A stretch of DNA of 64,000 nt, from assembly GCF_000002075.1 (NCBI RefSeq), contig NW_004797556.1, positions 179,409 through 243,408 on the forward strand. Direction: 5' to 3'. Shown one piece after another: positions 13,556 through 61,198 of this stretch. Position 1 is the stretch's first letter. Each line of letters starts with the position of its first letter. A program made the translations under genes and the position numbers. The notes beneath the pieces were generated by a model. That model was given only the letters and a program-made list of their open reading frames with translations, was not told the DNA's origin and did no database searches. This stretch comes from Aplysia californica (taxonomy: Eukaryota).

Positions 13556-13959
13556 GTAAGAGATTTTTCAAATAACTTTTATTTGCTTTGTTTTCAAGAA
13601 AATTTATGAGAAACTCATGGACTGCACACTGTCTTTCCTCATCTGATACACTTCATAGAATTGATTATTCAGCGCTCATAGCAACTGTGAAATCACTCTT
13701 TCTGCCGTCCCTCCAAAAGGGAACCCCTCCTTTATTTAATGGGCTTTATGGCAGTCTTAAGTCATTATACGATGATAATGGATCCTGCTCATGTGGTATG
13801 TCTGTCCATAAAAGAATTGATGCTTATACCTTTTTTAATTTTTAGAATGGGAGATTTTGTTCTAAAGTTCTTACACATTTAAACCACTTGTTTGCAACTC
13901 AAAAATGTTCTTTTCCATTGTCTTTGTGTTATGATTGCTGTTTGCATTTAATTTTACAG

Positions 13960-14091
13960 GATTTGAAGCAGACTTTGAGACAGGAGCTTGATTTCGAAAA
14001 TGAAGGTCAAAATGGAGAAGAATGTGCTAAGGATTTGTCTCATCTGAAATTTATATATGTACCTAAGGTCTATTGGAGCATGACCACCAAA
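13960..14091 (+). CDS. ADCK5: ADCK5-like exon D (QELDFENEG, ExD motif; YVPKVYW)
   Basis: cag|GAT and AAA|gtaagt; 132 nt, phase 0-0. Confidence 0.93.
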
Positions 14092-16405
14092 GTAAGTTGT
14101 GTTTTAGTGACAGAGTTTGTTTGAATAAAGAGAAGTACATCGACACAATAATGGTCTTTTAGTTCAGTGAAAAAGTAAGACTGACAGACAGAAACAATAA
14201 AGATGTGACATATATAATATAGGGAAAGTAAAGAAATAGAACCTACCTGTAGTGCCCTCAATTAATTGTATAAAAAGATTGGGCTGTTCATATTTTTAAC
14301 TGTTTAAGTTTCTTGTCTATAACTTTACTTGGGGGGGTGAGTTACTCACGTTAGAGTAACACAAATCACGCATAGTCAGAAAGCAGGCAGCAGCTCCGGT
14401 CTCAGGGGAAGTGCAAGTCAAGTGTGGGGCCGGACCGGTAAGTGTTAAAGCAGGTATGTTGAACAGTAGCAGAGTGAGAACCTTCCAGTAGTGCCCTCAA
14501 TTAATTGAATAAAAAGATTTCACTATTGAGGCTTGTTCCACTTTTAGACAAAAATAACTTTAACAAAAGTAAAATAGTAGCCAACTGAGAGAATGAAGTA
14601 TATGACTGTAAATATCATAACGTTGGATACTGGAATAGAAAGAAAATGTTTTGAAGTTATGTTTGCTGAGAGTGTTTATGTTCTAGGTTGTTCTTATCTC
14701 TGGTAGACCTATTGTAGTCGTCTGACGGAAAGTCATATTCCATTTACATTTATATTTTACTCTCCAGTGAGTATTACTTGATTTTCTGAGAAGCCATAAT
14801 GTTTGAATAAGGTGAGAACGAGCAGTTAGCAAAAGTGTAATAGTGACCCTGATGGCAATACAGCCGTCGGTCAATCCCCTTTTTATGCTAATGAAATGTA
14901 TGAAGTGATCATGCCTTGTTTTTATGTATTATCGGCATGGTTGAGGTAAGACATTGGCTGTGCATGTGACAGGAGCAAGCGAAATGGTTTACACTATTAC
15001 AAGTATTACCAGCAATGCCACAACACGATGGGTTTATTAATGGATGACTTATTTGGACTATAAGTAGCTCCCCTTATTTTGGCTATTTGTAGTCTAAATG
15101 AGGTAACCACCTCTGGGTAAGCTTATTTGGGTTCCACTCACTGACATGACCGAATGTCTCTCCCCTCTGGGCCTGCAAGGCTTGTAGGTTGCAACCTTTA
15201 TGTGTGTAATCCACTGTATCACATAGATCTGGGAGGGGAGGATTACGCATTCTCTTGAAACTGAACTTCAGAAGCGTTCTTAAGTTTTGGCCCTGGCACC
15301 AATGACAGCAAAGATTACTGTAATTGTAACTCTACTCCTTTACTACCCATAACTCTACCCCAACCCTCTGCTAAGTTACTATCCTTATTCCAGCACTCTT
15401 AGGGCCAAAACTGGAGATCGCTTTTTTTTCCAAGAATATCTATTATACTAAATTGGGAGTGCTTATTTAGGTCACATTTGGCCTCTATACCGTGAAGACC
15501 CGAAGGTAATCCTTATTAAGGTCATAGCTCGAACTACCCTTTTCACTTGACTGAGTTCATTCCGTTTTCTCAACGTTGCACCTTTCTCATAATTTAGTAC
15601 AGTTTTGTCTCAAGTGCGTAAGTTATAAATCATAGTATTTAATGAAAATAGTAAGAACAACACACAATGCGGAAAATTTTGCTCTATTCCATTGGTTTGA
15701 ATGAAGGCCAGATTTTTACGTTCATGGAGGAGCAAAAGCTAGACTACCATTTTGGCAAAATTTTGTCAAGTGAAAAAGTCAAATCCTCCAAATGGACTTC
15801 TGGGTCAAATTTGGTGTATAAAAAAGGTGGACACAGTACGCAACATGCTCGAGGGCACTGGGCACTCTCTTAGTAGTAGTAGGCTGTAGAACGTGCACAC
15901 AGCAGGGCGAATCGGCCTCGATACGCCCCGTAGACTTTTGTGATCGTCCGTGAAACCTCCCGTTTTGATGTGTCTTAACAACTCACAGTTTTGTTAATTG
16001 CGTTGCCACATCCTACAAGCCTACATCTTTTTTAAAAGGAAAAGAAAGATCTTCTAAATGGCGGTCTTCACCTGAAAATTGATTTGGTAGAACTGGAAAT
16101 ATTTGCTTCTGAAAACTAGGCAATTTTTACAACGCGATAAAATAAAACTACTGACGGAAACTTCAAGAAGTATTATTTATTCCTTCTAGCATCTTTTGAC
16201 ACTTGAATTGCATGCATGCACACACACAACACGCACGTAAATGTTTGTATGTGTATGAAATATGTTTGCCTGTTTAAAAAGCTTTATTCTGTAAATCTTT
16301 TACAAGAGTAAGCAATATAAATTCATGTCAATGAAGTATGTGTGAATAGTTATGTTCTTCTGTAAACGATGGTGAACTAAAAATTCATTTTTTGTGTTCT
16401 TTCAG

Positions 16406-16489
16406 CGAGTTCTGACCACAGAGTTCATCGATGGAGTAAAGATTAACAACCTTGAGGGGATAAAAGATCTTGGTCTCAATTTACAAGAC
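16406..16489 (+). CDS. ADCK5: ADCK5-like exon E (RVLTTEFIDGVKINNLEGIKDLGLNLQD)
   Basis: cag|CGA and GAC|gtaag; 84 nt; hinge-region RVL..EFIDG motif; absent from the ORF track. Confidence 0.92.
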
Positions 16490-17039
16490 GTAAGATTCCT
16501 GTGAAAAAAATGTTAACTGAATCTGTTTAAATGGTTCATTTTTACATTGAGCATAAACGTTATTGCAACTAGAAATATGTTGCAATGGACTCGACGAGAT
16601 TAGATGAGATTATGAATTTTAATGCTTCATCGCATTTACTTGCCTGTTCTTCAGTATCTTCATATTTATAGTAAATTCCTCAACTTGTGTTCCACTGTGT
16701 AAATATTTGCTTCTTTGTGCAGGCAAGAAAGAAATGGTATGGGGAAGAGGGGCATGTTCATTTATGTATTTTTGCTATTGACAAATAAATGTATTTGTTC
16801 ATGTAATATTTGCTGTAAAATGCATTGAGCATTCATAGAGGGGTTATTCACAACACAAATGCGGTCTATTAATGCCTTAACTATCCCTTGCAGTCTGTCA
16901 AAACGAAGATGACAGTGTCATGAACTCAACATCTAGTTTGAAAAATGATTTTGTAGCAGATTTATTACATTACTCTGTGATAGATTAACATGACAATCTG
17001 CATGCACATGTCTGTTCAAGGATTTGACCATTTTCACAG

Positions 17040-17121
17040 GTAGATCAGAAGCTCGTCCAGTCATTTTCAGAACAGATTTTCTTGTCTGGCTTTGTGCATG
17101 CTGATCCTCATCCAGGCAATG
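17040..17121 (+). CDS. ADCK5: ADCK5-like exon F, catalytic loop GFVHADPHPGN
   Basis: cag|GTA and G|gtaatt; 82 nt, phase 0-1. Confidence 0.95.
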
Positions 17122-24430: not shown

Positions 24431-24601
24431 TGTTTGTTCGGAAAGGCCAAGACAACAAAGCAGAGTTAGTATTGCTTGACCATGGCCTCTATGATCGGCT
24501 GAACGGGGAGCACCGGAGGGCTTTGTGTCAGCTCTATCAGGCAATCATCATGAAGGATGAATTGGCTATGGATTATAATTCTAACCTGTTGGGAGTGCAG
24601 G
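24431..24601 (+). CDS. ADCK5: ADCK5-like exon G (LVLLDHGLY, DFG-equivalent)
   Basis: cag|TG and G|gtaagg; 171 nt, phase 1-1. Confidence 0.95.
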
Positions 24602-26180: not shown

Positions 26181-26683
26181 TTCTTTAGAGATGACACCTC
26201 TGCCTGGAATTTTACAAGAACACCTCAATTTTATATATTGACAGGACCAGAGAACACAACTGTCTGACCTTAGACCTTGGTGATGATAGTATAAGTGTGG
26301 TATATCTGTATCCAAGTGGCATGGGATCTGTCTGTGTCCAAATTATATATTTTGAAGATGGTCTGTTACCAAATTGAGCATTCATAAATTTTCTTGGTTG
26401 TACGTATTATCTGAAATTATCCATCAAAAAATGTTTTGTACCACATCAACATGAAGAGTAAAACCTTAATTGCCTTTGATTTGAGAATATTTTTCAGCTG
26501 TAAATATTCACATGAAATGGACTTGAAATTATGAAAAAAAACAACCCTAAACATGAGTATCATAATGGAAAAAAGAAAGGTATTCTTTTGGACATCTTAG
26601 AGTAAGCTATTCTTTCTTCTCTTAAGGTTGTATGAGAATACATCTTTTATTACACTATACCAATTTTCTTTTCTCCACTCCAG

Positions 26684-26891
26684 ATTCCCTCATTTTTGCC
26701 ATTATGATCATGCAGCGTCCTGTGAGGATGAAATCACGACGTTTGTTTGATATCAAGCCCCCTACCCGTGAGGAGTGGGTGCTCATGAGCAAAGAGGACA
26801 AAGCCATGTGGAAAGAAAAGTTTCAAGAAATTCATGACAGGGTTCTTACAATCATGAAGGAAATGCCTTCACCTCTCTTCTGGATTTTTCG
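26684..26891 (+). CDS. ADCK5: ADCK5-like alternative exon H1 (divergent duplicate; DSLIFAIMIMQRP...KEMPSPLFWIFR)
   Basis: Long polypyrimidine tract with cag|AT, CG|gtacat donor; 208 nt, phase 1-2, stop-free; homologous to H2. Confidence 0.82.
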
Positions 26892-29329
26892 GTACATTCA
26901 TGCTGAACATAGTTCTGTACTGCAGCACTTCTCCAAGGGTAACAAACAAGAGTAAAAGTTGAAGCTTGACATCACCATACTGTGGACAAGATTTTATTTC
27001 TTAAAATTTCACGTGAATGGGGTCCCTTATTATGTCTCTTGGCAAATGAGAAAGGCCTATGGAAGAGAGATTTTTAGTGGAAAAAAAGTGCTCATGTGTT
27101 GCCATGGCATTTGTTTTTTTCTTAAGTTTGCTGATTGCCTTTGTCGGGTTTTTTTTTATCAACATTTGCTTGTTGTCTGTTCTCTATGAGTTTTGTGCCT
27201 GTGTCTTCTTCTTTTGGCTTTGGAAAGTATTTTTCTTTGAAATGGATCACTTTCACTTTCAGCTTGCATTGTTCGTTAAAACAGTGGGCTGCACTTCTGC
27301 AGATTTAATCGCTTTTCATTGACTATTTCTATTGTTCTTTCACATGAACTTGCTCATGTTTGCTTGTGTCACAGCACTTCTTTAATATAGGTATATCTGT
27401 CTTGGTACAGATTTATGCAACCAACTTGTTTCGCGTGCTCAAGCGCTGTAAAACTCTTACTAAACTAAGCTAAACAGGTATACTGTCTGTAGCAGCCCCC
27501 TGTAAAAGTACATGATGTGACTCCTGGTTATTTACAGTGGGGTCCTAAAGAAACTTGAAAATGTGTTCACCCAATCATGGAGTATACCAATTTAAAACTA
27601 AGTAAATTCTGCGTTATCTGATCATCTATGGTAATAGTCGCCCCAGATGTGGTCACTCGAAACTGACCTTAAAATATCATGCTTGGCAAATTTCTGTGAA
27701 ATCAGAGAAACGTAAAAGTGTATTTGTGTTTGTATTGAAGTGTATTAATTAACATTGATGGAATAGACATGTATTGCTTATAAAATGAACAGAGAATTTT
27801 TTTTTCTTCAATAAAATATATTTTATTAAAACAGTTTGAAACAGAATTGGAAAACAGTAGAGCTGTACCCCGGTAGCAATCTTGCTCTTGCTCGCAAGCC
27901 CCTAGTTCAAGTCACAAGCCTCAAATCACTAGGTCAAATCATCAAATCAAATCACCAGCATGATAAGTTGAGTCTAGCCAAAACTGTAACCTCCTTGGTC
28001 TAGTCTAAACTTCAAGTCCACACCAATTAGCAATCCGCGAAGCCACTCGTGTCAGACCCCGTCATCATCCCCACCCTGCTTGCAATCCATGAAGCCACTT
28101 CCGTCAGAAAATGAGAGAGGGGGAGAGTGAGACATCCCGCCCACAGTGTCACTGCGCGGCGTAACGCTGTAGTCTGCTCGATTAATTGAAGGCTTTCAAG
28201 CAGCGGACAGCCGTCAAGTCTCAAATCCCATCCGCAGCACACAAGTCCCATGATTCTCATAGTACTGTTTTGTGCCAGTGAATTGTCCCAGGACCAGCTC
28301 GAAACCTGACGACAAGTCACTTTGCTGTCTTGCTGTAGCAGCGAACGGCAGGCAGCAGGACCGCTCGCTATATGAACTTTGAACCGTGGAGGAAGGAAGA
28401 TGCTGTGTTTGTTTTGGTGCAAGATGTAGAGAGCTGAAGTTATTTCTAACTTCCCGCCGTTGATCAGCTAAGCAAGTGGATAAGTGAGAGGGAGCGTAGT
28501 AGCAGAGACCTAGGTTTCTGGTAGTAATGAGAATAAGTAGACTTAGATTACCCTAGAATGGAAAACTCTAGGGGTCATTGTTATTGGCTTTTGTATCGTA
28601 ATTATGTAACCTATTTTGTAGATGTGTCACGCTCACAGTGACATAATACAGAACATTTAGGAGACGGGCTAGGCCTACTTCAACCTAGTGTCAGGGCCAA
28701 CCTGTGCTGAGAGGGAACAACGCCCCAGCAGAAAGACGGAGGTTTTCAGTAAAAATTTCTCCCCATACGGGAATCGAACTGATGTCTTTTGCGTGCGACG
28801 ATGAAGCGCTTGGCTCGTGCACATTAAAAATAAACCGGCCTTTGCATCGTGAGAATAGCCGATCCAATATTAATTTTTAAGTGCATTGAATAGAGCTTTT
28901 TATTTTTTATAACCCGACTGGGAAAAAACCAAAACAATCTTTCACTTTTGGTGCAAGCCTCTCAACGCAAATAACCAGAGAATCTTCTGTAATGTGTACT
29001 GAGCCCACAGCCAGGAAGGTTCGCGACGTCACGACACTGTACTGTTCTAATTTCGATTTTATTTTGTTGTGAAACCTTTATTTTTCACGTCTTTACACTC
29101 TGTGTGGCCACAAATGATATTCTCGATGCTTAAAACAGAGCTAAAAAAATTCTGGTGCTTTAGATTAAGTTACCTCTATCAACATAATGCTATACGTCGT
29201 CACAGAGAGTTGAAATCTTGAAAATTAATGGCAACTTTTGCCTTCTTTTGTGGCAAGTTTTGGACCAAAAAATGGTAACAAACACAGATGCTAGATATAG
29301 CACGCGATACTTTGACTTACCATTGCATG

Positions 29330-29900
29330 TGGTCATTGGTATTTTGTTATGGAGATATTGATTTTGTGTAGAGCACGAACCCTTTGGGCATGGATTTGGT
29401 TAAATTTTGGACAAAATTATATGTCATTTTATCCCAAATGTCACAGGGAGTTGTAAACAAAGCGTCTGAATTGGGAGCAAAGTCGTGTTTCTTCAGCTGT
29501 AGTTTCATGGAGCTCAACATATCTGTAGGATTCATATCTGGGCTGTTTACTGATGACCACTCTGTTGTTGGAATGATTTGCTTTTCCAAGAATTGTCTGT
29601 AGGCTTTGGCCCTTTGAGAAGGTGCTTTATCATGCATAAAGATGCCTACTTGATTGTAAACAATGAGCACATTTAACATCAAGTTCACATTTTGTGCGGA
29701 ACCTGTGACTGCTCTGTTTTTCAATTTGTCTGGAAATATTGTAATAAAATGTTGTTCTTTTCAGAGACAATAATATTTTCCTTGCATTTGATATGCAATA
29801 CTCCATTCCACCAATGTTGACACTCCAATGCAAGCGAAAGCACAATTTACATTTCTTTGATTTCACATAATTTTGCCAAGCATGAATTTGAAAGGTCAAT
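29330..29900 (-). pseudogene. Tc1-like transposase C-terminal remnant
   Basis: FMHDKAPS..W..NSPDMNP. Confidence 0.65.
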
Positions 29901-30565
29901 TTTGAATTACCCTATCTCAGGTGACTCTACTTACTTATGGTACAGAATTGATTTTTAAAATTATTTGGTGTCAGAGTTGAACAGATAGAGTAGTGTTGAG
30001 GAAAATGTCAACTTTTTAATGTTTTAGATGTATGCTAAGAATAGATGAGGGAGTCCAGTGATGCTCCTGCAGTCAGAAAAATCTGCGAATAAGTGGCACA
30101 GTTGTTAAAGCCCCAGGATTTAAAGCTGAGAAAAAAAGTTACACCTTATATCCCAAACTTTAACGAATTTCCTTTGTTCTTCAGGTTTAAAAAATCCATC
30201 ATGTAAAATGCATCCTGTGTTTGTGGATTAATGGTTAGGCTGTTCATTGTTGCATGCAAAAGACATGAGTTCTATTCTCATGTTTTGGGGAAATCTGCTT
30301 CATAGAATTTTTTCATCTTTCCAGATGCTGGATCCCACTTTACCGAGTTGGCCCTGAGAGGCAGGCTTGAAGCAGCAGGTCTCCAAAATAGTCTAAATTA
30401 TGTCAATAGGCGCTTGAATACTCGCAATGTAATTATCTTCCTCATCCAGGTATTACTGCCAGTGAAGAAAACATTGATTGTGTTAAGGTCTGTTTCATAC
30501 ATTGTGCTGCCTCATCTCCTTGTGGTCTCAATCTATTGTTTGTTGTCTGTGCTTCCTCTCTGCAG

Positions 30566-30743
30566 ACTACGAGTTATTTTGTGAAATTCTGGTGCAACGG
30601 CCATGGAAACGGAAGACTTTGTATCTCTCTACGTCTATGACCTCTGATGACCTGCAGCACATGCGCACAATGGCACAGCACCACTTTGATCAGATAATGG
30701 TGGTGCTAAAAGAAATGCCTCGCAACCTGTTGCTAGTTATCAG
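30566..30743 (+). CDS. ADCK5: ADCK5-like alternative exon H2 (canonical-like; DYELFCEILVQRP...KEMPRNLLLVIR)
   Basis: tgcag|AC and AG|gtcggt; 178 nt, phase 1-2. Confidence 0.9.
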
Positions 30744-31561
30744 GTCGGTGCTACAATCTTTATTCTGTTCTTCTTTTATTGAGCGCCCCATGAATCACCT
30801 TGTTGTTAAAAAAGAAAATCTTTTGAAAGATTAGTTTGGATCATTGTTTGGTGCACCGTTTGCTTGTGTCTCTAGGTTTTGGTGCAAATGGCTTTGTTTC
30901 GAATTTGCATTTGGGAATTCTTTGAACTTTGGTTCTTTGGAGAGTTTTCAAATTCTCCATCCTCTTGGCTGACTCATTCCCATGAAAGATTGATGCTAAA
31001 ATCAGAGTTCTTGTTGCTTAAATGTTAAAAGGAACATTTAACTTGTACAATTACCAAGTTCAATAATATTTTGTTATTTCCTCTTTTCTGCTTTGTTGCT
31101 GTCATGCTTGGAGCTGCAGCTTCTGGTTAGTATAAATCTTTGTTAACTTGGAGGAGTGCTTTTACTTTATTAGTTTGCTGTATCGGCTTTTAGGAACTGT
31201 CTGCTTTGTTGTAATTTGGTGCTATTTTTTTACCATCTTTTTTTCTTTTAAATTTTATCTAATGTTGCCAAAGGTAAAATTGTCTTTGGTAAAGATGAGA
31301 TTGATTTTCCTTGTTTAATGCATTCTAAAAGCTAAAGTAATATATTAACATTGTGCTGATTGGTTATACCCATTCAATGGTTTTATTTTTAAGAACAATG
31401 TTATTAAGATTGGGTTTCTATAAAAACTAATGGCAATAAAACTTTCATTGTTTTAGATTTTTAGAGAATTGATACATAAAGCATTAATGTTCTTTTACCC
31501 AAAAGACTATAGAAGCTTGATAATTGAGAATAAGAATGATTTACCCTTCTTTTTGCTATAG

Positions 31562-31636
31562 GAACTTGAACACTATCAGGGCTATCATCCGAGACCATGG
31601 CAACACAGTAGACAGATATGGCATAATGGCAAGAAG
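31562..31636 (+). CDS. ADCK5: ADCK5-like exon I (NLNTIRAIIRDHGNTVDRYGIMAR)
   Basis: tag|G and AG|gtatga; 75 nt, phase 2-2; N.NT.RA..VDRY..MA pattern. Confidence 0.9.
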
Positions 31637-31759
31637 GTATGAAGAGGTTGGGTTTTTTTCTGGGTAAACTTATTTTGAAAAAAAAAAATTGATATAGGTG
31701 TTTTTATGCTCCAATTGACACAGTTTAGATCATTCAGGGAGCGGGCTTCTGACTTTACT

Positions 31760-53485: not shown

Positions 53486-53636
53486 NNNNNNNNNNNNNNN
53501 NNNNNNNNNNNNNNNNNNNNNNNNNNNNNNNNNNNNNNNNNNNNNNNNNNNNNNNNNNNNNNNNNNNNNNNNNNNNNNNNNNNNNNNNNNNNNNNNNNNN
53601 NNNNNNNNNNNNNNNNNNNNNNNNNNNNNNNNNNNN
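53486..53636. other. Assembly gap (N run)
   Basis: 151 N. Confidence 1.
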
Positions 53637-60936: not shown

Positions 60937-61198
60937 NNNNNNNNNNNNNNNNNNNNNNNNNNNNNNNNNNNNNNNNNNNNNNNNNNNNNNNNNNNNNNNN
61001 NNNNNNNNNNNNNNNNNNNNNNNNNNNNNNNNNNNNNNNNNNNNNNNNNNNNNNNNNNNNNNNNNNNNNNNNNNNNNNNNNNNNNNNNNNNNNNNNNNNN
61101 NNNNNNNNNNNNNNNNNNNNNNNNNNNNNNNNNNNNNNNNNNNNNNNNNNNNNNNNNNNNNNNNNNNNNNNNNNNNNNNNNNNNNNNNNNNNNNNNNN
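60937..61198. other. Assembly gap (N run) in a RREB1 intron
   Basis: 262 N. Confidence 1.

What the first reader, a model, noticed from the sequence alone, without database searches (positions are those of the whole stretch)
26684..30743. Ancient duplicated, mutually exclusive exon pair swapping a C-lobe segment of the ADCK5/UbiB kinase
Seen: between exon G (ends phase 1) and exon I (starts phase 2) lie two stop-free exons with canonical AG/GT sites and the same 1-2 phases. H1 is 208 nt (70 aa, DSLIFAIMIMQRPVRMKSRRLFDIKPPTREEWVLMSKEDKAMWKEKFQEIHDRVLTIMKEMPSPLFWIFR). H2 is 178 nt (60 aa, DYELFCEILVQRPWKRKTLYLSTSMTSDDLQHMRTMAQHHFDQIMVVLKEMPRNLLLVIR). By hand alignment they share about 17 of 60 residues (D...F.....QRP...K...L and M...D........Q...D......KEMP..L....R), and H1 carries a clean 10-aa insertion. 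Both lengths are 1 mod 3, so including both or neither frameshifts the mRNA. I saw no other duplicated ADCK5 exon. Inference: an intact frame and splice sites despite heavy divergence imply long purifying selection on two isoforms of a poorly understood kinase-like protein, differing only in the helical region after the DHG motif. H2 looks like the vertebrate-type exon and H1 like a derived variant with a Lys/Arg/Trp-rich insert. I know of no described mutually exclusive splicing in ADCK5, but I could not search.
Basis: partly seen in the sequence, partly recalled or inferred. Interest (0 to 1): 0.9.

Follow-up and report, generated by a model that had tools for sequence, protein, structure and literature searches.

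The report
Two swappable exons in ADCK5
A sea-hare gene for a poorly understood mitochondrial kinase-like protein (ADCK5) carries two diverged copies of one exon; spliced transcripts with either copy exist, and several other invertebrate lineages keep both, so it is a real but ordinary kind of alternative splicing in a new gene.

Summary
H1 (26684-26891, 208 nt) and H2 (30566-30743, 178 nt) are stop-free, have AG/GT borders and share one phase between exon G (24431-24601) and exon I (31562-31636).

- **Homology:** the two exon types match at profile level (hhalign 97.6%, E 3e-12), with one 10-residue gap.
- **Splicing:** transcriptome-like contigs from four studies join H1 to I with GT..AG. 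One run shows G joined to H1. One run also has an H2-to-I contig. No H1-to-H2 joint was seen.
- **Frame:** using both exons or neither gives a stop within 2-6 codons.
- **Conservation:** six other lineages (seven contigs), unnamed and from public assemblies, carry H1-type and H2-type exons in the same order, with the same lengths and phases. DNA similarity stops at the splice sites. H1 shows pN 0.08 against pS 0.81 to its nearest relative. A tree separates the two types at 100/100 support.
- **Exception:** one lineage (two contigs) has only the long type.

Its claim that H2 is the vertebrate type was not tested.

In the runs laid, which were chosen for holding H1, H1 is the commoner form. I found no paper describing this. 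The scan had noted similar exon pairs in other genes of this genome, not this one. I file it as a new member of a known kind. The functional difference between the isoforms is unknown.

The parts
24431..24601 (+). Exon G of the ADCK5-like gene. It is constitutive, holds the DHG motif and the end of the Pfam ABC1 domain, and ends leaving 1 base of a codon.
   Evidence: One search shows the sequence (cag| acceptor, |gtaagg donor). One search matches PF03109 positions 202-240 of 244, E 6.8e-6. In one search the X1 loose end before 26683 equals the last 30 bases of this exon.
26684..26891 (+). Exon H1, the long alternative copy: 208 nt, 68 whole codons plus two split ones, with a 10-residue insert relative to H2.
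   Evidence: One search shows the sequence. One search shows the joint 26890/1 to 31561/2 (GT..AG) in X1, X3, X11 and X20, including a 2923-nt contig in X11. Orthologues appear. One search gives pN 0.08 and pS 0.81 against L005. In one search DNA similarity to relatives is confined to 26674-26894.
26892..30565 (+). Intron between the two alternative exons (3674 nt). It has a U2-type GT donor and holds expressed repeat copies.
   Evidence: Searches show the borders. In one search only repeat-like, very deep short contigs lie here, and no exon-like joints. One search finds no convincing long-range complementary pair.
30566..30743 (+). Exon H2, the short alternative copy: 178 nt, 58 whole codons plus two split ones.
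   Evidence: One search shows the sequence. In one search, X3 holds a 236-nt contig covering 30565-30741 and joined to 31560/2 (GT..AG after a +2 shift), at depth 4.2. Orthologues appear. One search finds 18 invariant columns among 8 sequences. In one search DNA similarity to L008 and L003 is confined to about 30559-30756.
31562..31636 (+). Exon I, constitutive. Its first base completes the Arg codon begun by either H exon.
   Evidence: One search shows the sequence (tag| acceptor, |gtatga donor). In one search contig pieces end at 31636 and are joined to H1 or H2. Searches find it 71-83% identical in L015, L016, L018 and L037.
6344..17120 (+). Upstream conserved ADCK5 exons at about 6344-6457, 7364-7507, 13439-13561, 13963-14097, 16400-16492 and 17037-17120. 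Exact borders were not determined. Each is present once.
   Evidence: maps them by tblastx against the ADCK5 loci of other species. One search finds PF03109 matches for 7364-7504 and 17028-17120.

Best explanation
H1 and H2 are a tandem-duplicated pair of mutually exclusive exons in the single ADCK5-like (UbiB/ABC1 family) gene of a sea hare. The mRNA carries G-H1-I or, going by one H2-to-I contig, G-H2-I. The two proteins differ only in a 60- or 70-residue, mainly helical segment just after the Pfam ABC1 domain. That segment runs into the conserved 'MP..LL.I.R' helix, which continues in exon I. Shown here: both exons are intact, each is spliced to I, and H1 is spliced to G. The pair is older than the split of all the lineages found, and both copies are under purifying selection. 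Inferred: exclusivity is enforced mainly by reading frame, since both lengths are 1 mod 3 and using both or neither gives an early stop and presumably nonsense-mediated decay. The choice between them would be made by unknown splicing regulators. The swap probably changes a surface of the C-lobe (a partner, lipid or membrane contact) rather than the nucleotide-binding core, which lies in the shared exons.
For: Sequence and phases. Early stops on double inclusion or double skipping. Homology of the two types. Spliced contigs: one search shows H1 to I in four runs of four studies, G to H1 in X1 and H2 to I in X3. In X3 the depths are 7 for H1, 4.2 for H2 and 12.8 for exon I. One search lists 20 runs holding all sampled H1 words, 18 of them contig sets of 2-118 million letters, far below the 927 Mb genome (the other two exceed 1000 million). 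H1 is single-copy, so a processed pseudogene is unlikely. A transcript-catalogue fragment from a relative reads straight from the H2 type into exon I (P0008). Tandem H1-type plus H2-type exons occur in L003, L004, L008, L014, L016/L018 and L019, with AG/GT borders, identical phases and 208/178 nt lengths. Similarity stops at the exon borders. For H1, pN/pS is 0.10-0.14 against the nearest relatives. For H2 it is 0.23-0.46. Synonymous sites are saturated throughout. The two types split at 100/100 support in the tree. ABC1 domain matches in the flanking exons.
Against: All transcript evidence comes from assembled contigs of runs whose RNA nature the tool only guesses. Contigs cannot give true isoform ratios or prove that the H1+H2 form is absent. 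The H2-to-I joint rests on one low-depth contig in one run, flagged 'between: not known'. The G-to-H2 junction was outside the laid stretch and is inferred only from 28 unplaced letters on that contig. The runs were selected for holding H1. The organisms behind the related contigs are unnamed, so the age of the pair cannot be stated in taxa. The full-length isoforms were not folded or searched (the joined step was left out), so the structural placement is an inference. The exon-only models have only moderate confidence (pLDDT 65 and 68).
Confidence: 0.88

Rival explanations
1. In this species H1 is in effect the constitutive exon, and H2 is an unused or rarely mis-spliced relic of the old duplication. 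On this view there is one functional isoform, not two.
For: One search finds H2 in a contig of only one of four runs, at depth 4.2. Searches show a lineage (L015, L037) that has dropped the H2 type altogether, so one exon type can suffice.
Against: H2 is intact, with good splice sites. The H2 type is the more conserved of the two across lineages: 18 invariant columns and 69% mean column identity, and pN/pS 0.23-0.46 with saturated pS. DNA similarity to relatives stops at the H2 borders. The runs were picked for holding H1, which biases against H2-rich samples. In X3 the H1 and H2 depths together roughly equal the exon I depth. P0008 shows the H2 type spliced to I in a relative.
Confidence: 0.08
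2. H1 is not part of ADCK5. It is a chance open frame, an exon of a nested gene, or an assembly artefact.
For: H1 alone has no Pfam match and no significant match to solved structures.
Against: Contigs join it to exon G and to exon I at the predicted sites. It is conserved between G and I in the ADCK5 loci of other species and is homologous to H2. It is single-copy.
Confidence: 0.01
3. Exclusivity is imposed by a dedicated mechanism rather than by frame alone. Candidates are U2/U12 spliceosome incompatibility as in JNK genes, steric hindrance from a very short intron, or competing intronic RNA pairings as in Dscam.
For: These are the known mechanisms for mutually exclusive exons (PMC1874599). 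Weak inverted repeats lie upstream of H1 and H2, for example 26530-26560 with 30274-30304 at 71% complementarity.
Against: The donor sites of G, H1 and H2, here and in the related loci, start GTAAGG, GTACAT, GTCGGT, GTAGGA, GTAATT or GTGAGG. None has the U12-type RTATCCTT. The intron between H1 and H2 is at least about 235 nt in every locus, too long for steric exclusion. The inverted repeats are weak, lie among repeats, and are not shown to be conserved.
Confidence: 0.15

Closest known systems
Mutually exclusive exons derived from tandem exon duplication (general class; e.g. JNK/MAPK8-10 exons 6a/6b inside the kinase domain, PMC1874599)
   Same: There are two adjacent, homologous exons with the same phase, and one is used per mRNA. 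The swap replaces a segment of the C-terminal lobe of a kinase fold while the nucleotide-binding part stays common. The pair is conserved over long evolutionary distances.
   Different: The JNK pair is kept exclusive by a U2/U12 hybrid intron, and none is present here. The two ADCK5 copies differ in length by 30 nt and share only about 26% identity. Both lengths are 1 mod 3, so frame alone penalises double use or skipping. No tissue pattern is known.
ADCK5 / ADCK1 (yeast Cqd2) branch of the UbiB (ABC1) atypical kinase-like family
   Same: The flanking exons match Pfam ABC1. The HADPHPGN and LLDHG motifs are present. A separate ADCK1-like paralogue exists on another contig.
   Different: The library I could search describes no alternative exon pair for ADCK5 or any UbiB member. 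The mouse and rat reports found there are a retained intron and an alternative 3' site. PMC8346625 calls the biological roles of ADCK1, 2 and 5 elusive.
Other duplicated mutually exclusive exon pairs noted by this scan in the same genome (MEK exon 8, s1-759905; front-end desaturase, s1-721669)
   Same: They lie in the same genome, are the same kind of feature, and were reported as conserved among molluscs and beyond.
   Different: They are different genes. Those notes are unchecked AI notes, and I used them only as agreement on the organism.

Membership tests
Mutually exclusive exon pair of tandem-duplication origin | Adjacent exons that are homologous to each other | tested here: met
   BLASTP gives E 7e-5. 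hhalign of the H1-type profile against the H2-type profile gives 97.6% probability and E 3.1e-12 over the full length.
Mutually exclusive exon pair of tandem-duplication origin | Same splice phases at both ends, so that either exon alone keeps the frame | tested here: met
   Searches show this in the window. One search shows the same AG/GT positions and 208/178 nt lengths in the loci whose contigs hold both exon types (L003, L004, L008, L014, L016).
Mutually exclusive exon pair of tandem-duplication origin | Transcripts exist with each exon alone | tested here: met
   One search shows G to H1 (X1), H1 to I (four runs) and H2 to I (X3, one contig). The G-to-H2 junction is not directly shown. 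P0008 in a relative reads from the H2 type into exon I.
Mutually exclusive exon pair of tandem-duplication origin | No productive transcript with both or neither | tested here: inconclusive
   No H1-to-H2 joint was found in four runs, but contigs cannot show absence. Both alternatives give a stop within 2-6 codons.
Mutually exclusive exon pair of tandem-duplication origin | Both copies conserved in other species | tested here: met
   Searches find the tandem pairs. One search gives pN/pS well below 1. One search shows two clades at 100/100 support.
UbiB / ABC1 atypical kinase-like family | Pfam ABC1 (PF03109) domain above the curated cut-off | tested here: met
   Exon-wise matches: 66.9, 32.1 and 25.8 bits against a cut-off of 22.9. 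The genome search lists matches at C286:186766-186918, 193335-193586 and 196442-196528.
ADCK5 orthologue (as opposed to ADCK1, ADCK2 or COQ8) | Closest named relatives are ADCK5 proteins | not testable with these tools
Single-exon queries reach only short unnamed fragments, and the joined protein was not built.
JNK-type exclusivity by a U2/U12 hybrid intron | U12-type 5' splice site (RTATCCTT) on the intron between the two exons | tested here: not met
   The H1 donor is GTACATTC here, and GTAGGA, GTAATT, GTATTT, GTAGTA, GTAATC or GTGAGG in the relatives.

The most novel reading that the evidence does not exclude
The H1/H2 pair predates the split of several invertebrate phyla, and different lineages have resolved it differently. 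Most lineages found here keep both. One keeps only the long type. Vertebrates, as far as I remember, keep only the short type. On this reading ADCK5 has two ancient functional forms, defined by this C-lobe segment, that differ in a partner, lipid or membrane contact, which would give a natural handle on the unknown function of an orphan UbiB protein.
Probability: 0.35. Interest if true: 0.6.

Novelty: new member of a known kind. Interest (0 to 1): 0.45.

Why it matters
ADCK5 is one of the UbiB proteins whose biological roles are still called elusive (PMC8346625). Selection has kept two alternative versions of one C-lobe segment side by side for a long time. That marks the segment as functionally important and tunable. 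It also supplies two natural variants to compare in binding, ATPase or coenzyme-Q distribution assays. For annotation, gene models in molluscs and other invertebrates should list two isoforms here. Any prediction that includes both exons is frame-shifted. As a phenomenon it is an ordinary example of tandem exon duplication.

Tried and rejected
- All searches were exon by exon, by reference. The search for homologous proteins therefore saw only 32-119 aa fragments without names. The representative search with H1 gave 7 short genomic fragments.
- **ESM Atlas with H1:** no usable hit.
- **Solved structures:** the combined exon profile and exon G gave only chance-level or no matches, so the segment could not be placed on COQ8A by sequence.
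- **Rooting with the ADCK1-like paralogue:** the profiles do not match its equivalent region significantly (best E 0.14-0.4). Only its length, about 62 aa without the insert, is a weak hint that the short form is older.
- **Exclusivity mechanisms:** U12-type sites were rejected and steric hindrance was rejected (introns of at least 235 nt). Competing RNA pairings have no convincing candidate. The L016 and L018 introns are about 80% identical, too close to be informative.
- **Chance hits:** the weak H1 hit on contig C41 (L002) is noise. The 283-aa 'ABC1' gene call in L018 has stop codons in the locus as delivered and was dropped.
- **RefSeq isoform names:** the supplements of PMC9334734 do not mention the gene.
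- **Restrictions:** The two N runs (53486-53636, 60937-61198) were left untouched.
Full report
**What is in the sequence**

Exon H1 spans 26684-26891 (208 nt) and exon H2 spans 30566-30743 (178 nt). Both have an AG acceptor after a good pyrimidine tract and a GT donor. Both are stop-free in the frame dictated by exon G (24431-24601, leaving one base) and exon I (31562-31636, supplying one base).

Exon G holds the LLDHG motif and matches the last part of Pfam ABC1, positions 202-240 of 244. The alternative segment therefore lies just beyond the Pfam model of the UbiB/ABC1 domain. Other exons of the gene also match ABC1.

If both H exons were used, H2 would be read in a frame that stops after five codons. 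If both were skipped, exon I would stop at its second codon.

**Are the two exons homologous?**

The single pair scores E 7e-5 over the C-terminal half. Once orthologues of each type were collected, the profile-profile comparison gave 97.6% probability and E 3.1e-12 over the full length. Identity is 26%, with a single 10-residue gap (alignment). Shared features:
- a hydrophobic start;
- Q-(R/K)-P;
- a basic residue a few positions on;
- a conserved Asp in the long helix;
- the M-P..L motif that runs into exon I.

The H2 type has an invariant Glu at position 6, where the H1 type is hydrophobic. The H1 insert nearly always carries an aromatic residue, usually Trp.

**Is it spliced as proposed?**

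- Twenty public runs from seven named studies hold all sampled words of H1. Eighteen of them are contig sets of 2-118 million letters, far below the 927 Mb genome, so they look like transcriptomes.
- I laid four runs from four studies on 26500-31700. All four have a contig joining 26890/1 to 31561/2 with GT..AG ends. In X11 it is a 2923-nt contig.
- In X1 the letters hanging off before 26683 are the last 30 bases of exon G, so G to H1 to I is shown.
- X3 also has a 236-nt contig covering H2 and joined to exon I, with GT..AG after a +2 shift, at depth 4.2. The tool flags this joint as 'between: not known'.
- In X3 the H1 contig (266 nt) and the H2 contig (236 nt) each consist of the exon plus about 30 letters on either side. 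This is what an assembly graph yields at a two-way bubble. Their depths (7 and 4.2) roughly add up to that of exon I (12.8).
- No H1-to-H2 joint was listed, and apart from repeats the introns are uncovered.
- H1 has only one copy in the genome, so a processed pseudogene does not explain the spliced contigs.

Limits of this evidence:
- These are contigs, and the RNA label is the tool's guess.
- The runs were chosen for holding H1.
- G to H2 lay outside the 6000-letter limit and is only implied by 28 unplaced letters.

**Conservation**

A search of 1.84 billion representative proteins with H1 found seven short fragments. Word-indexed searches added three close relatives of H1 and one of H2. A profile search added two more. 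All are gene calls on genomic contigs from public assemblies that read from the intron into the exon and stop at the donor.

I fetched those contigs and searched them with G, H1, H2 and I.

| Locus | What it carries |
|---|---|
| L003, L004, L008, L014 | H1-type exon followed by H2-type exon, same strand |
| L016, L018 | complete G-H1-H2-I order |
| L019 | G-H1-H2; the contig ends at 6057, before any exon I |
| L015, L037 | G (L015 only), one long-type exon, then exon I 290-350 nt later; no H2-type remnant |
| L017, L005 | contigs too short to tell |

L016 and L018 are close relatives of each other. In the loci checked at nucleotide level (L003, L004, L008, L014, L016), the acceptors and donors sit at the same codon positions and the lengths are again 208 and 178 nt. 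The intron between the two exons is 235-2000 nt in these loci.

**Selection**

Nucleotide similarity between the window and its nearest relatives is confined to 26674-26894 and about 30559-30756. The flanking introns are unalignable.

Nei-Gojobori counts:

| Comparison | pN | pS |
|---|---|---|
| H1, window vs L005 | 0.08 | 0.81 |
| H1, window vs L008 | 0.12 | 0.84 |

For H2, pN/pS is 0.23-0.46. Synonymous sites are saturated almost everywhere, so dN/dS is far below 1 but cannot be given a precise value. A maximum-likelihood tree of 15 exon sequences separates all H1-type from all H2-type at 100/100 support. The duplication therefore predates all these lineages.

**Organism and dating**

The genome has 927,310,431 bases in 4332 contigs. 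A published table gives 927.3 Mb for Aplysia californica AplCal3.0 (PMC8861042). Earlier notes of this scan call this genome a sea hare. The organisms behind the related contigs are unnamed. The closest ones come from Tara and other marine metagenomes. Identity in constitutive exon G falls to 52-59% for L015-L019, so some are distant, but I cannot say which phyla.

**Mechanism**

- U12-type splice sites are absent, so the JNK-type hybrid-intron mechanism (PMC1874599) does not apply.
- The intervening intron is too long for steric exclusion.
- No convincing competing RNA pairing was seen.
- The supported, though inferred, mechanism is frame: any mRNA with both exons or neither meets an early stop.

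Exon-only AlphaFold models have moderate confidence (pLDDT 65 and 68). Both versions show a 24-residue helix ending at the M-P motif, followed by the start of the next helix. In H1 the insert adds a loop and a short helix (residues 28-33) before the long helix.

From general knowledge of kinase folds and of COQ8A (my memory, not tested here), this region lies in the C-lobe, away from the nucleotide site. That is why I infer a change of surface rather than of catalysis. The full-length isoforms were not assembled, searched or folded.

**Comparison with what is known**

The feature belongs to the well-known class of mutually exclusive exons born by tandem exon duplication. The nearest analogy is the JNK exon 6a/6b pair, which also swaps part of a kinase C-lobe. 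In the paper library I found no description of such a pair in ADCK5 or in any UbiB protein. The rodent ADCK5 splicing events found there are a retained intron and an alternative 3' site. Whether sequence databases already list the two isoforms could not be checked. The scan had already noted similar exon pairs in two other genes of this genome (MEK, a desaturase), not in this one.

**Verdict**

H1 is not a minor derived variant in the data I could see. The 'vertebrate-type' label for H2 is untested. I rate it a new member of a known kind and of moderate interest, because it marks a functionally tunable segment in an orphan UbiB protein.

Noticed in passing
L015:365-1544 and L037:347-969: Two related unnamed contigs carry only the long (H1-type) exon between G and I, with a 290-350 nt intron after it and no H2-type remnant. 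One lineage has therefore settled on the long form alone.
   Followed up: partly
L008:202-405 and 919-1092: Against the window, the L008 lineage is closer in H1 (73.5% aa) than in H2 (60%). L003 and L014 show the reverse (54.5% and 42% in H1 against 69% and 72% in H2). The two exon copies have evolved at unequal rates in different lineages.
   Followed up: no
P0008 (transcript-catalogue fragment of a close relative): After the H2 type and nine residues of exon I, the fragment continues with residues that match H2-like DNA read in another frame (compare). It may be an assembly chimera, or a contig that runs back into H2.
   Followed up: no
window 26863-26948: Run X20 holds an 86-nt contig (depth 4) colinear with the genome across the H1 donor site. 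It is either unspliced precursor or some intron retention after H1.
   Followed up: no
window 27892-28086, 28500-28840, 28936-29283, 29980-30253: Very deep short contigs with mismatches (depth up to about 2000) lie in the H1-H2 intron. There is also a backward joint 27811 to 27248 with CTTGTA between, seen in three runs. These look like expressed copies of repeat families from elsewhere in the genome, not ADCK5 exons.
   Followed up: no
G000:C89, L035 minus strand 7754-7371, 7078-6704, 5962-5768: An ADCK1-like paralogue. Its segment equivalent to H is about 62 aa, lacks the 10-residue insert, and is split by an intron at a different place. No duplicate exon was seen there.
   Followed up: partly
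L018:3893-4744: A 283-aa gene call flagged as ABC1 has several stop codons in the locus as delivered, and the locus was marked 'translates_to_query: no'. Only a stretch of about 46 aa of it is a real ADCK5 exon.
   Followed up: yes
run X14: One run labelled as another organism (organism B) holds all sampled H1 words. It is either a very close relative or a labelling difference.
   Followed up: no
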